Shown: positions 1 through 3,529 of the stretch, piece after piece
Layout of the letters: each line of letters starts with the position of its first letter
Numbering within the stretch: position 1 is the stretch's first letter
Source: Octopus sinensis
Taxonomy: Eukaryota
Length of the DNA: 27,374 nucleotides
Direction: 5' to 3'
Assembly: GCF_006345805.1 (NCBI RefSeq)
Contig: NW_021833320.1
Span: 1-27,374 of the forward strand
The notes under the pieces: generated by a model
Told to the model about the DNA's origin: nothing
The model's database searches: none
Seen by the model: the letters and a program-made list of their open reading frames with translations, nothing else
Made by a program: the position numbers and the translations under genes

Positions 1-906
1 TATCATAGGTGATTAGTGAGGAGAGGTACGACGACGATCTTGGGGCGAACCTGGCCGTCGACGAGGAATACCTGACCCGCCTGTTTGAGACGACCTTCGG
101 GCCGGGACCTATGGACAACTTCCAGAGATCACTGGCCTGGCAGTGCTACCGAGAAGCGCTATCCGTTCGGGATAAGCTCTATAGGCATGGCTCGAGAAAC
201 ACGGGGCCGACCTGCCCGAGATGCGGCCAGAGCGACGAAACCGTTCTGCACGCAATCGTGCAGTGTCCAACAATCTCCGACCTGTGGGCTTATGTCGAAC
301 GACTGCTGTCACGTGTGGGACGTGTCGGTTTATCAGCTGAGTCTATCGTTAATATCATCACGCCTCCTTCCTTCATACTTGTGGCTATGGCGAAAGAATG
401 TATCTGGTGGACGTGTCAATCTCTCATCAACTTCTTCAAGTATCACTTGAAAATGAAAGTGAGAGTAGAGAAGCAAGTTTTGTCTAGTGAATGTTTTAAA
501 AAAAGATGGGTGAATGTAGCAAGGATGGGACGTATGAATGACGAAGCCACCTTGACTATGATCTTATGAACCGTAAAAATTAATGCAGAGAATTGCTTAT
601 TTGTAAAAAAAAAAAAATAACATATGACTTCATTGACCGAGGTTACCGTGGTCTTTTCCGTAGACTTTTCTTTCCACGGGTAAACCTCACCTGTCCTCCC
701 CTTTACACTTTACATTGAAATTTCTGTGATAACAATCCCTATTGATCGATTTTTTCTCTTTCCTTTTTTTTTGCTTTTCTCTTTCTTTCCATTTACGATC
801 CATTTTGATCGAAAACCAACCCATCTTTTTTTTATCTCCAAAAAGAAAAGCTCTACCTTGTAATTTGTCCTGTCTGTGTGCAGCCCTGTGTGGCTAATAA
901 AGAAAC
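1..906 (+). mobile_element. 3' part of a Tx1/L1-clade non-LTR retrotransposon (ORF2 C-terminus plus 3' UTR), cut by the window start
   Basis: ORF 9-569 has the CCHC zinc-knuckle context of L1/Tx1 ORF2 (CPRCGQSDETVLHAIVQCP, preceded by WQCYREALSVRDKL). A T-rich 3' UTR ends in AATAAAGAAAC and joins (TATC)n. The 3' UTR recurs at 23233-23454. Confidence 0.85.
9..569 (+). pseudogene. Disrupted ORF2 C-terminus (zf-RVT-like zinc-binding region) of the Tx1-like LINE
   Basis: An in-frame TAG at 6-8 lies directly upstream of the GTG used by the ORF track, so this is not a real start. CxxC...H...C motif present; stop at 567-569. Confidence 0.75.
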
Positions 907-1702: not shown

Positions 1703-2004
1703 TATGTCCAGAACGGCTTTGATCCCCGAATATTGCAATATCAGAAAAGCCAATGGAAAAGTGAGATGCTTTGAGAAGCGGATGCGAGATACATGAAACA
1801 AACAGCCCCTTGGCTAAGACCCTAATCAAATATATACAGTTACAGTTTCTACATATCGTGTTAGCCGTTTGCAGCATTGAGATGGACTGAAACAAAAGAA
1901 ATAAAAGGTTCTGCAACGATATATAACGAAATCATACAGTGGCAACTTCTGTTACTAACTGCACACGTTATGAAAGGAAAAAATGAAGCTTAAAGATTTA
2001 TAAA

Positions 2005-2510
2005 TACACACACACACACACACACACCACGCACATACACATAGAGGCACACAGAGGTATACACACAGGGGTACACACACAAACAGAGGAACGCAAACGC
2101 ATACGCACACATACACACACACACACACAAATACATACACACACAGAAGAACGCACACGCATACACACACATACACACAGGCACACACACAAACACATAC
2201 ACACAGGCACACACACACACAAACACATACACACACAGAGGCACGCATACGCACACATACACACACAGACACACAAACAGGTACACACACAAACACATAC
2301 ACACACAGAGGCACGCACACGCATACGCACACATACACACACCCACAGGCACACACACACAAACACATACACACACAGAGGAACGCACACGCACACACAC
2401 ACATACACACAGGCACACACACACACGAACACATACACACACAGAGGAACGCATACGCACACAGACACACGCACACACACACACACACACAGACACACAC
2501 GCACGCATAT
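2005..2510. repeat. CA-rich minisatellite with a higher-order unit of about 55-70 bp
   Basis: Recurring block AAACACATACACACACAGAGG(A/C)ACGCA(C/T)ACGCA, about 5 copies, embedded in (CA)n. Confidence 0.85.
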
Positions 2511-2787
2511 GGATCCCGTTTAGAATATCTGACCATAGTGTTCAGTTATTCAATCAACTGGATTACGAAGTTCGGCGAACTAGAACATGCGCAGGCATGG
2601 CTATGTAGTAAAACAATTTGTTTCTCAACCACATGGTTCCAGACTCGGTCCCACTGTGTGGCAGCTTCGGTAAGTATCTTCTACTATAATTGCGGACCGA
2701 CCAAAGCCTTGTGAGTGGATTTGGTAGGCGGAAACTGAAAGAATCCCATTGTGTGTGTGTTAAATGTTATATAATATATATATATAT

Positions 2788-2828
<41 letters not shown>

Positions 2829-2832
<4 letters not shown>

Positions 2833-3103
2833 ACAGTAGTCTGGAACAACTGAATCTTAGTCAGTCAGTTGATGGGCTCCACTACCTCAATGTTCTTAAA
2901 ATTTAATCCACATCTTTGTCTATATATCTACCTCTCTATAATGTTGCCACTTGATATGAAATTTTGATTAATGGAAAACTCTATAATTGGCTGATGAGTG
3001 CTCAGCATTTTAAAACTGTTGTAATACTACAACGTTTAATAAAATGATGTAGTACGAAACGATCGTACCAATTACCGGAGTCATTCTTGTTGCTTATTTT
3101 GAT
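2829..3103 (+). mobile_element. Hammerhead-bearing insert, probably a Penelope-like element pseudo-LTR fragment or a retrozyme monomer
   Basis: About 275 bp of non-repetitive sequence with (TA)n on both sides; carries a type I hammerhead with a palindromic stem III, the arrangement described for Penelope-like elements. Confidence 0.65.
2970..3085 (+). ncRNA. Type I hammerhead ribozyme, predicted cleavage after GUA (A3067)
   Basis: Stem I TAATTGG(2984-2990)/CCAATTA(3068-3074), extended by ACTC/GAGT and AATG/CATT. Core CTGATGA 2991-2997; G2998 pairs with C3055; GAAA 3056-3059; stem III within palindrome ACGATCGT 3059-3066; H17 = A3067. Stem II is a long interrupted hairpin, 2998-3055. Confidence 0.88.
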
Positions 3104-3529
3104 TATATATATATATAATATATATATATGTATATGCATATATATACATATGCGGTGTTTGTGCTTGTGTTTGTCCCGTACCATCGCTTTACAGCCAGTG
3201 TTGTTTCTTTTTACGTCCCCGTAACATAGTGGCTTGGCAAAAGTGACCGACATAATAAGTACCAAACTAGAAAAAAAAGCAAAATACCCCACCATAACAC
3301 AGGGGTTCGATTTGTTCGGCTTAACCTCGTCAAGGTGGTGCTCCAGCATGGCCACTGTCCAATGACTGAAACAAGTAAAAGAAGGGATTGAGTAGTCAAC
3401 AAACAAATGCACCATTGATATAATTATTAAGAGGAATCATTACGGAACTGGGAAACAAGCCTTTAAATTTCAGGTATAATCAATGCGATGGGCTTGAATT
3501 CAGTTTCAATGCGCGGAAATATATATACA

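What the first reader, a model, noticed from the sequence alone, without database searches (positions are those of the whole stretch)
2970..3085. Apparently intact type I hammerhead ribozyme with a very long stem II and a dimer-type stem III
Seen in sequence: every catalytic-core nucleotide is present (CUGAUGA, G10.1-C11.1, GAAA, GUA cleavage triplet). Stem I has 7 perfect pairs, an internal loop (UA/CCG), 4 more pairs, a GAAA bulge and 4 more pairs. Stem II folds as GUGCU/AGUAC, bulge, CA/UG, G.A, CAUUUUA/UAAAAUG, AAAC/GUUU, GUUGUA/UACAAC, closed by an AUAC loop: roughly 28 bp, versus the usual 1-5 bp. Stem III can close only around a 2-nt loop, but ACGAUCGU is an 8-nt palindrome. Established: minimal type I hammerheads with palindromic stem III occur in Penelope-like elements and metazoan retrozymes and cleave as dimers. 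Inference: the stem I loop at 7 bp and the stem II bulge at 5 bp from the core are placed to make the tertiary contact. The preserved pairing in decayed surroundings suggests a young or active family that could cut any host transcript running through it.
Basis: partly seen in the sequence, partly recalled or inferred. Interest (0 to 1): 0.88.

Follow-up and report, generated by a model that had tools for sequence, protein, structure and literature searches.

The report
Long-armed hammerhead ribozyme in retrotransposon fragment
The motif is a real hammerhead self-cleaving RNA motif with an unusually long second arm, but it is the dead-end tail piece of a very abundant Penelope-like jumping gene, not a host gene, and whether it cuts has not been tested.

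Summary
Window 2970-3087 (+) carries every hammerhead core nucleotide, a type I layout, a ~24-bp stem II and a palindromic stem III. It is not chance. The host genome (2.72 Gb) holds 8,751 copies with an intact core and 45-75 nt between the core boxes, against 6 for the reversed pattern. Across about 35 subfamilies, stems I, II and III keep pairing through compensatory changes.

The window copy (2830-3102) is a 273-nt, 5'-truncated 3' end of a Penelope-like element (PLE). It is inserted in a (TA)n tract inside an older SINE-like repeat. Longer copies encode RT plus a C-terminal GIY-YIG nuclease with the CxCX5C, no-CCHH, CxxC and CxH signature of the "Hydra" PLE clade. They also show PLE hallmarks: 5' truncation, head-to-head partial copies and (TA)n targets.

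Distant Hydra-clade relatives have ordinary 5-7-bp stems II, so the 58-60-nt arm is a lineage-specific expansion. Rfam's hammerhead models miss it. Hammerheads in PLEs are known; this is a new structural variant.

Catalysis, the proposed tertiary contact and cutting of host transcripts are untested. The window copy is solitary and has no partner for dimer cleavage in cis.

The parts
2768..2828 (.). (TA)32 microsatellite, 5' flank of the insertion (target tract)
   Evidence: Tandem Repeats Finder. Family copies are generally flanked by (TA)n.
2830..3102 (+). 5'-truncated 3'-terminal fragment (273 nt) of a Hydra-clade Penelope-like element, short 3'-end form. No ORF and no partner copy.
   Evidence: 95-96% identical to more than 40 scored genomic copies. 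The alignment gives the boundaries. Longer copies lead back to an RT/GIY-YIG ORF.
2970..2990 (+). Stem I, 5' strand: AAUG 2970-2973, GAAA bulge 2974-2977, ACUC 2978-2981, UA 2982-2983, UAAUUGG 2984-2990
   Evidence: Sequence and MFE fold. The four proximal pairs are 98-100% paired across 54 distinct copies, with G-C / A-U / G.U alternation.
2991..2997 (+). Catalytic core box C3-A9 (CUGAUGA)
   Evidence: Subfamilies carry CUGAUGA, CUGAAGA, CUGACGA or CUGAGGA, so only N7 varies.
2998..3055 (+). Stem II, a 58-nt imperfect hairpin of about 24 bp. Base GUGCU 2998-3002 / AGUAC 3051-3055. Tip GUUGUA 3018-3023, loop AUAC 3024-3027, UACAAC 3028-3033. Bulged U at 3050. AAUAAA at 3038-3043.
   Evidence: Folds. 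All 34 subfamily representatives fold as one long hairpin of 17-24 bp. Covariation: 81% of cells paired against 35-52% in slid registers, score 0.280 against 0.162 shuffled (0/500).
3056..3059 (+). Core box G12 A13 A14 A15.1 (GAAA)
   Evidence: Kept in 93 of 100 copies sampled without reference to the core.
3059..3066 (+). Stem III palindrome ACGAUCGU. It cannot close as a hairpin and pairs with a second copy.
   Evidence: Family variants CGAUCG 37, CAAUUG 25, CGAUUG (G.U) 23, CAAUCG (A.C) 7. Pair 76-79: GC 16, AU 11, GU 4. The cofold dimer forms it.
3067..3068 (+). Predicted self-cleavage site (after A17 of GUA, before C1.1)
   Evidence: Position follows from the hammerhead consensus. Not tested experimentally.
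3068..3085 (+). Stem I, 3' strand: CCAAUUA 3068-3074, CCG 3075-3077, GAGU 3078-3081, CAUU 3082-3085
3083..3102 (+). Conserved 3'-terminal block AUUCUUGUUGCUUAUUUUGA, the end of the short 3' form. Likely recognised at reverse-transcription start (inference).
   Evidence: Near-identical in all subfamilies. Twelve of 30 copies end here and run into (TA)n. Eighteen continue about 125 nt to ...GCUGAACU and then (TA)n.
3104..3151 (.). (TA)24 microsatellite, 3' flank of the insertion

Best explanation
Window 2970-3087 is the hammerhead ribozyme (HHR) motif that sits 36 nt from the 3' end of a Penelope-like retrotransposon of the 'Hydra' clade. The element is present in thousands of copies in this 2.7-Gb animal genome.

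How the source elements are likely to work:
- They occur as partial tandems and head-to-head pairs.
- A transcript carrying two HHRs in the same orientation can pair the two ACGAUCGU (or ACAAUUGU) palindromes into an extended stem III. This forms a double hammerhead that cuts after GUA. The element's own RT/EN protein may help, as shown for another PLE.
- In this lineage stem II has been expanded from the usual 5-8 bp to a conserved 58-60-nt arm of about 20-24 bp. The arm keeps an invariant bulged U five pairs from the core and an AAUAAA/AUUAAA hexamer. I infer that it has a second job, such as a protein handle for the RT/EN or a 3'-end signal, besides closing the core.

The window copy is a 273-nt, 5'-truncated, dead-on-arrival insertion into a (TA)n tract inside a SINE-like repeat. 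It has no ORF, no known promoter and no partner HHR. At this locus it is most likely inert unless a host transcript runs through it and meets another copy in trans.

Shown: the motif, its family, the covariation and the PLE identity. Inferred: catalysis, dimer cleavage and the extra role of the arm.
For: Motif and fold.

Family size:
- 43 scored copies at 95-96% identity out of 1,747 candidates.
- 8,751 intact-core copies against 6 for the control.
- 6,330 copies found with anchors that ignore the core, against 11. Of the first 100 listed, 93 keep GAAA and H17.

Covariation:
- Stems II and III: 81% of cells paired against 35-52% in slid registers; 109 double-change cells against 51 shuffled; covariation score 0.280 against 0.162; 0/500 shuffles as high.
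- Stem I position 2 alternates G-C 27, A-U 14, G.U 12.
- Stem III alternates CGAUCG, CGAUUG and CAAUUG.

Dimer: the cofold MFE forms the 8-bp intermolecular stem III and is 6.8 kcal/mol better than two monomers.

PLE identity:
- Variable 5' truncation, (TA)n flanks, adjacent inverted 5'-truncated copies and 30-45-nt inverted tails.
- About 19 head-to-head pairs, about 5 tandem pairs and no tail-to-tail pairs among 100 listed hits.
- An ORF with RT motifs FDINNYYSSI and LYRDDALF, linker CNCRIKSKC (CxCX5C), a GIY-YIG-like NVIYKCT...YLGCT...KQRVSNH without CCHH, CQLC..E, and C-I-H.
- This signature matches the Hydra-clade definition in PMC8557442.

Lineage-specific arm: Hydra-clade relatives on ENA contigs have two direct HHRs flanking the ORF with stems II of only 5-7 bp.
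Against: - No cleavage or RNA-end data exist.
- No Rfam hammerhead model matches, even at E<=10.
- In 16 of 35 subfamily representatives the 10.1-11.1 position is U.U, not a Watson-Crick pair. This may weaken catalysis.
- The monomer MFE pairs UGAU of the core with AUCG of stem III. That is an inactive alternative fold.
- Genomic 3' ends lie 36 nt or about 160 nt downstream of the cleavage site. The RNAs that were copied into DNA were therefore not cut at the 3' HHR.
- A small sample of about 19 short 5'-truncated copies shows no pile-up of 5' ends at C1.1.
- For the Anolis PLE, HHR mutants did not impair insertion in vitro (PMC11167929).
- RNAalifold on the MAFFT alignment called only the tip hairpin.
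- I did not recover a full-length copy, so the N-terminal Hydra motifs (DKT, RWK) are seen only in the distant relatives.
Confidence: 0.8

Rival explanations
1. The conserved structure is mainly a protein-binding or 3'-end recognition element of the retrotransposon RNA. The long hairpin plus the conserved 3' block would be used to start target-primed reverse transcription. On this reading the hammerhead core is a catalytically weak or silent relic that is carried along.
For: - The long arm, its bulged U and the AAUAAA/AUUAAA hexamer are conserved in length and place across all subfamilies.
- The 3' block AUUCUUGUUGCUU is nearly invariant.
- Copies end downstream of the cleavage site, so uncut RNA is the template.
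- Many subfamilies have U.U at 10.1/11.1.
- In the Anolis PLE, HHR mutants insert normally in vitro (PMC11167929).
- Naiad PLEs thrive without canonical HHRs (PMC8557442).
Against: - Every subfamily keeps CUGANGA, GAAA, A15.1/U16.1, H17 and C1.1, while neighbouring helix positions change freely. A pure binding hairpin does not require this.
- The stem III palindrome is kept by a double change. That makes sense for a dimer hammerhead.
- Distant relatives keep the same core with a short stem II.
Confidence: 0.15
2. The window copy is part of a retrozyme-like non-autonomous element: short tandem repeats, each with a hammerhead, that make circular RNAs.
For: - Some genomic copies lie in same-orientation tandems with short periods: 311, 398 and 562 nt.
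- A three-copy array has a 545-nt period at C3:153693758-153694910.
- A 2026 preprint derives animal retrozymes from PLE pLTRs (10.64898/2026.07.22.740005).
Against: - The window has a single copy and no second HHR or 3' block within 27 kb.
- It is flanked by (TA)n and a split SINE-like repeat, which is a simple insertion.
- Its sequence is collinear with the 3' UTR of ORF-bearing copies.
Confidence: 0.04
3. A chance resemblance to the hammerhead consensus in AT-rich repetitive DNA.
For: Rfam models give no hit. The region is AT-rich, so hairpins are easy to draw.
Against: 8,751 matches against 6 for the reversed-pattern control. Compensatory changes occur in all three helices. The fold z-score is -4.9. 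Distant relatives have an HHR at the homologous place.
Confidence: 0.01

Closest known systems
Minimal type I hammerheads of metazoan Penelope-like elements (Cervera & de la Pena 2014, PMC4209133)
   Same: - Type I layout, located in the terminal repeat region of a PLE.
- Very short palindromic stem III that implies dimer cleavage.
- Thousands of variable copies per genome with covariation.
- Frequent pairs on opposite strands 100-700 bp apart.
   Different: - Stem II there is 'larger than usual' at 6-8 bp. Here it is a 58-60-nt arm of about 20-24 bp.
- There is no extra nucleotide between A9 and 10.1.
- Stem I here is long and composite.
Hydra clade of C-terminal EN+ PLEs (Craig et al. 2021, PMC8557442)
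   Same: - CxCX5C linker, GIY-YIG without CCHH, CxxC and CxH around the conserved E/N.
- (TA)n target sites, HHR present, aquatic invertebrate hosts including Mollusca.
   Different: - Described elements are under 3 kb with 'canonical' HHRs.
- This family has a 3' UTR of about 1.35 kb between the stop codon and the HHR, and an N-rich low-complexity insert in the ORF.
- Tandem spacings of 4.6-4.8 kb suggest a longer unit.
- Its HHR escapes Rfam HH1, and its core-box spacing exceeds the 7-17 nt and 35-50 nt ranges searched in that paper.
Poseidon PAc hammerhead of Anolis carolinensis (Frangieh et al. 2024, PMC11167929)
   Same: A PLE-borne HHR. Two alternative genomic 3' ends (the 'tail') are explained by internal starts of reverse transcription. 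Templates are uncut RNA.
   Different: - PAc's HHR overlaps the ORF start. Here it lies 36 nt from the short 3' end.
- The PAc tail is 30-40 bp. Here the two ends are about 125 nt apart.
- PAc activity was measured and is protein-dependent. Here nothing was measured.
Double-hammerhead dimers of newt satellite 2 and avocado sunblotch viroid (Forster et al. 1988, cited in PMC4209133; recalled)
   Same: Stem III too short to form alone; two units pair to build an extended stem III and cut.
   Different: Those are tandem satellite or viroid RNAs with short stems II. This one is a dispersed retrotransposon end.
Rfam Hammerhead_1 (RF00163)
   Same: Same core and topology.
   Different: The 45-position model does not score this motif. 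Over the whole genome it returns only seven 42-48-nt canonical hits at other loci.

Membership tests
Hammerhead ribozyme, type I | Core boxes C3-U4-G5-A6-N7-G8-A9 and G12-A13-A14 | tested here: met
   CUGAUGA 2991-2997 and GAA 3056-3058. Only N7 varies among 97 family copies.
Hammerhead ribozyme, type I | A15.1-U16.1 pair and cleavage triplet N-U-H (H17 not G), followed by stem I | tested here: met
   A3059, U3066, A3067 (GUA), C3068. Kept in 93 of 100 copies sampled independently of the core.
Hammerhead ribozyme, type I | Three helices around the core, supported by covariation; stem I open-ended (type I) | tested here: met
   Stems II and III: (81% paired, 15 of 30 pairs with double changes, 0/500 shuffles as high). 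Stem I. Both strands of stem I run out into flanking RNA.
Hammerhead ribozyme, type I | G10.1-C11.1 closing pair of stem II | tested here: inconclusive
   Met in the window copy (G2998-C3055). Across 35 subfamily representatives: GC 8, GU 6, AU 4, UA 1, unpaired (mostly U.U) 16. U.U is also seen in distant relatives.
Hammerhead ribozyme, type I | Score above the Rfam gathering threshold for a hammerhead model | tested here: not met
   No hammerhead hit at gathering threshold or at E<=10. The likely cause is the 58-nt stem II against a 45-position model.
Hammerhead ribozyme, type I | Stem I / stem II tertiary contact | not testable with these tools
   Only an observation: the bulged U3050 is at least 90% conserved.
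Hammerhead ribozyme, type I | Site-specific self-cleavage | not testable with these tools
   No RNA or biochemical data. The DNA-level proxy (5' ends of truncated copies at C1.1) showed no enrichment in about 19 loci.
Penelope-like element, Hydra clade | Single ORF with RT followed by a C-terminal GIY-YIG nuclease lacking the CCHH motif | tested here: met
   Open frames of 709 and 787 aa carry FDINNYYSSI and LYRDDALF, then NVIYKCT...YLGCT...KQRVSNH, with no CxxC/H..H inside. Pfam itself reports nothing. The assignment rests on motifs and on alignment to relatives.
Penelope-like element, Hydra clade | Linker CxCX5C; CxxC and CxH flanking the conserved E/N | tested here: met
   CNCRIKSKC, CQLCSME and SCIHS. 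The same columns are present in P0003-P0005. Definition from PMC8557442 section 11.
Penelope-like element, Hydra clade | N-terminal motifs (RWK; DKG changed to DKT) | tested here: inconclusive
   DKT is present in relatives P0004 and P0005.
Penelope-like element, Hydra clade | PLE insertion anatomy: 5' truncation, partial tandems, adjacent inverted 5'-truncated copy, optional tail, (TA)n targets | tested here: met
Penelope-like element, Hydra clade | RT groups with the Hydra clade in a phylogeny | not tested
The nearest database proteins are unnamed ENA proteins at 31-41% identity.
Metazoan non-LTR retrozyme | Tandem array of short (about 170-400 nt) units, each with a type I HHR, yielding circular RNA | tested here: not met
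   The window holds a single copy. Short tandems exist elsewhere in the genome, but circular RNA cannot be tested.

The most novel reading that the evidence does not exclude
The 58-60-nt stem II may define an unrecognised class of PLE hammerheads. In this class helix II would have been expanded into a conserved arm, with an invariant bulged U and an AAUAAA/AUUAAA hexamer, that doubles as a protein-binding or 3'-end-processing module. If so, standard descriptors and Rfam models systematically miss such ribozymes. PLE clades reported to lack canonical hammerheads might then carry long-arm versions too. One candidate is the Naiad 'half-core' cases, with core boxes 35-50 nt apart, mentioned in PMC8557442.
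Probability: 0.3. Interest if true: 0.6.

Novelty: new variant of a known kind. Interest (0 to 1): 0.45.

Why it matters
Hammerheads in Penelope-like elements are established, and their role is still unclear. Three points make this family useful.

- Its catalytic core is kept in more than 8,700 copies and about 35 subfamilies, while stem II has grown to roughly three times the longest arm described for type I hammerheads. The papers read here-8 bp 'long'.
- Such motifs are invisible to Rfam and to descriptor searches with short spacers. Counts of ribozymes in animal genomes, and statements that some PLE clades lack them, may therefore be too low.
- It offers a natural test of whether a hammerhead can work without a loop-loop contact, or with a bulge-mediated one.

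For the host genome the window copy is an ordinary dead transposon fragment.

Tried and rejected
- **Rfam.** The scan found no hammerhead at the gathering threshold or at E<=10 on 2900-3150. The only hits were weak AT-repeat matches to miRNA models.
- **RNAalifold.** On the MAFFT alignment it called only the 6-bp tip of stem II (and my own run). I therefore counted the hand-drawn structure, with controls.
- **Pfam.** It found nothing in the family ORFs. A search of solved structures gave nothing meaningful. Clade assignment therefore rests on motifs.
- **First guess at the autonomous partner.** A LINE (APE+RT) lies downstream of one copy. It was rejected because it is an unrelated neighbour.
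- **'A 1.7-kb non-coding non-autonomous element.'** Considered and rejected. Its first 87 codons are the C-terminus of an ORF that is open for 700-800 aa in other copies.
- **In vivo cleavage via 5'-truncation points.** There is no spike at C1.1. Junctions cluster instead at TA-containing sites such as TTACCGG and ACCGG. The sample was small and overlapping matches inflated the count.
- **A mis-set spacer** (AATAAA-N45-75) missed normal copies. It was repeated correctly.
- **Flanks for more subfamilies.** Stem I statistics therefore rest on 54 distinct copies.
- **Retrozyme and chance explanations.** See the rival explanations.

Full report
**1. The observation**

Window 2970-3087 (+) reads as the first-stage reader said.
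- CUGAUGA lies at 2991-2997.
- A 58-nt hairpin lies at 2998-3055, closed by G2998-C3055.
- GAAA lies at 3056-3059.
- The palindrome ACGAUCGU lies at 3059-3066.
- The triplet is GUA, so the expected cut is between 3067 and 3068.
- Stem I is UAAUUGG/CCAAUUA, then ACUC/GAGU, then AAUG/CAUU.

The unconstrained minimum-energy fold reproduces stems I and II (-31.8 kcal/mol; z = -4.9 against 200 shuffles, none as good).

Two corrections are needed. Stem II has about 24 pairs, not 28. Several 'perfect' features are also private to this copy. Compared with the family consensus it has lost the bulged A of stem I (CCAAAUUA > CCAAUUA), one C in the distal stem I strand and one U in the stem II loop. It also carries an A>G change that turns a C.A mismatch into C-G.

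No Rfam family reaches its threshold in the window. No hammerhead model appears even at E<=10 on 2900-3150.

**2. It is not chance**

The window lies in a 2.72-Gb, 13,516-contig eukaryotic assembly.
- A DNA search found 43 scored copies at 95-96% identity out of 1,747 first-look candidates.
- The pattern CTGANGA-N45-75-GAAAYRATYRTAC occurs 4,294 + 4,457 times, against 4 + 2 for the reversed pattern.
- Anchors that ignore the core (AWTAAA ... TTCTTGTTGCTT) give 6,330 hits against 11. Of the first 100 listed, 93 keep GAAA and a permitted H17. The exceptions are singletons, or the two arms of one insertion.

**3. Covariation**

The listed copies fall into about 35 subfamilies whose helices differ while the core does not.
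- Each subfamily's stem II folds on its own as one long imperfect hairpin of 17-24 bp.
- On a MAFFT alignment of 35 representatives (A1), my drawn structure for stems II and III has 81% of cells paired, against 35-52% when the 3' partners are slid by 1-3 columns.
- Fifteen of 30 pairs show changes on both sides. There are 109 double-change cells against 51 in shuffles. The covariation score is 0.280 against 0.162, and 0 of 500 shuffles reach it.
- Examples at the base of stem II: GUGCU/AGUAC, GUACU/AGUAC, GCACU/AGUGC, AUACG/CGUAU, GUACG/CGUAC.
- Examples at the tip: GUUGUAA/UUACAAC, GCUGCAA/UUGCAGC.
- The stem III palindrome occurs as CGAUCG (37), CAAUUG (25) and the G.U intermediate CGAUUG (23). 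The A.C intermediate CAAUCG is rarer (7).
- In 54 distinct copies read with flanks, the four stem I pairs next to the core are 98-100% paired. Position 2 alternates G-C (27), A-U (14) and G.U (12).

Caveats:
- The copies are related, so cells are not independent events.
- The pattern required the core.
- RNAalifold on the same alignment called only the tip hairpin.
- The 10.1-11.1 position is a standard pair in only 19 of 35 representatives. The rest are mostly U.U.

**4. What it belongs to**

Aligning copies with flanks shows variable 5' ends and (TA)n on both sides. There are two alternative 3' ends:
- ...CUUAUUUUGA (12 of 30 copies);
- a form about 125 nt longer, ending ...GCUGAACU (18 of 30).

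Many copies have an inverted, 5'-truncated copy directly upstream, or a 30-45-nt inverted 'tail'. Among 100 listed hits about 19 pairs are head-to-head, about 5 are tandem (311 nt to 4.8 kb apart) and none is tail-to-tail. These are the hallmarks of Penelope-like elements as described by Craig et al. 2021 (PMC8557442).

Walking upstream gave a 1.72-kb stretch whose first 87 codons are open. That peptide has 12,989 first-look candidates in the genome and continues into frames of 700-800 aa in other copies. These frames carry:
- RT motifs FDINNYYSSI and LYRDDALF;
- a CNCRIKSKC linker (CxCX5C);
- a GIY-YIG-like NVIYKCT...YLGCT...KQRVSNH without the CCHH motif;
- CQLC..E, and C-I-H near the end.

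Together with (TA)n targeting and an HHR, this is the published definition of the 'Hydra' clade of C-terminal EN+ PLEs (PMC8557442 section 11). Pfam does not recognise the ORF, so the assignment is by motifs and by alignment to relatives. The HHR lies about 1.34 kb downstream of the stop codon and 36 nt from the short 3' end.

**5. The window copy**

The element fragment is 2830-3102. It lies between (TA)32 at 2768-2828 and (TA)24 at 3104-3151.

The sequences outside the fragment (about 2627-2749 and 3157-3262) are two halves of a SINE-like repeat. In uninterrupted paralogues these halves lie only about 40 nt apart (for example L050 963-1085 and 1125-1232). The fragment therefore inserted into that repeat's internal microsatellite.

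No second copy, HHR or 3' block exists in the 27-kb window.

**6. Comparison with relatives**

The nearest database proteins (31-41% identity) lie on short ENA contigs and share DKT, CxCX5C, CxxC and CxH. In two of these contigs the ORF is flanked by two direct hammerheads, 2,373 and 2,498 nt apart:
- CUGAUGAUUUAGUGCCCCGCACUCAUGAAACAGUCUGUA
- CUGAUGAUUGGUUCACCGCCAUGAAACAAGUUGUA.

Their stems II are 5-7 bp. They also have U.U at 10.1/11.1 and near-palindromic stems III.

The long arm is therefore a lineage-specific expansion of an ordinary PLE hammerhead. In the papers read here, type I stems II are 4-5 bp, and 6-8 bp is called long (PMC4209133; PMC13725137). Rfam Hammerhead_1 run over the whole genome returns only seven canonical 42-48-nt hits elsewhere (only 74 candidates were scored, so this is a lower bound).

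**7. How it probably works**

- Stem III cannot close on itself. Cofolding two copies gives a symmetric dimer with the 8-bp intermolecular stem III, 6.8 kcal/mol better than two monomers. This is the double-hammerhead arrangement proposed for PLE and satellite hammerheads (PMC4209133).
- Tandem copies exist in this genome and could supply two motifs on one transcript.
- For the only PLE studied biochemically, the HHR cleaved only in the presence of the element's protein and was dispensable for insertion in vitro (PMC11167929).
- In line with that, genomic copies here end downstream of the cleavage site, so the reverse-transcribed RNAs were uncut at the 3' HHR.
- A small sample of short copies shows no excess of 5' ends at C1.1.
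- The conserved arm, its invariant bulged U (3050) and the AAUAAA/AUUAAA hexamer (3038-3043) suggest an added role in protein binding or 3'-end formation. This is inference.
- The monomer MFE also pairs part of the core with stem III, an inactive alternative.

**8. Verdict**

This is a genuine, family-wide hammerhead motif of a Hydra-clade Penelope-like element, with a stem II several times longer than described. It is a new variant of a known kind. The window copy is a solitary dead fragment. Catalysis, the tertiary contact and any effect on host transcripts are untested.

Noticed in passing
window 3038-3043, and family alignment A1 columns 51-56: An AAUAAA hexamer (AUUAAA in some subfamilies) is conserved in the 3' strand of stem II in nearly all subfamilies, about 23 nt upstream of the HHR cleavage site. 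In two distant relatives an AAUAAA lies just downstream of the HHR (L081 about 3315, L083 about 2600). It could be a polyadenylation signal or part of a recognition or bulge motif.
   Followed up: partly
window 3050: The single unpaired U five base pairs from the core, on the 3' strand of stem II, is at least 90% conserved across 35 subfamilies, while its neighbours covary.
   Followed up: no
window 2593-2767 and 3152-3382: The PLE fragment and its (TA)n tracts split an older SINE-like repeat. In paralogous copies (L050, L019, L032 and others) the two halves are only about 40 nt apart, across an internal TA/TG microsatellite.
   Followed up: yes
G000 subfamilies; L081 and L083: Large subfamilies with CUGAAGA or CUGAGGA cores have U.U rather than G-C at 10.1/11.1 (UUGCU...GCAU-GAAA). 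Both distant relatives do too. This looks like a clade trait and not decay.
   Followed up: partly
G000:C3:153693758-153694910; C1:17579841/17580152; C3:71668500-71668692: Same-orientation tandem arrays of the element's 3' end with short periods (545, 311 and 131 nt), some with identical fold-back junctions. These are possible retrozyme-like or satellite derivatives.
   Followed up: no
several G000 loci listed: Mini-insertions made only of the last 20-36 nt of the element, joined to their own reverse complement (for example ...AAGCAACAAGAATGACTCCGGAGTCATTCTTGTTGCTT). They look like snap-back products of abortive reverse transcription.
   Followed up: no
L049 2321-4450 (-), L050 1481-3844 (+): The family ORF carries a long asparagine-rich low-complexity insert between the RT and EN parts. 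It is absent from the relatives P0003-P0005.
   Followed up: no
L036 9580-9901 / element positions about 300-800: The 1.35-kb 3' UTR contains an internal duplication of about 290 nt and a 16/32-nt tandem repeat.
   Followed up: no
window 9-569 (+): An open frame with a zf-RVT domain (E = 2.5e-7). This is the tail of a LINE-type reverse transcriptase unrelated to the PLE.
   Followed up: partly
window 2004-2504: A 500-bp imperfect (AC)n tract with a 66-70-nt higher-order period lies just upstream of the SINE-like repeat.
   Followed up: no
G000:C13:29988995-29989039 and six other loci: Seven canonical 42-48-nt Hammerhead_1 matches above the Rfam cut-off lie elsewhere in the genome. This is a different, short type of HHR.
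   Followed up: no
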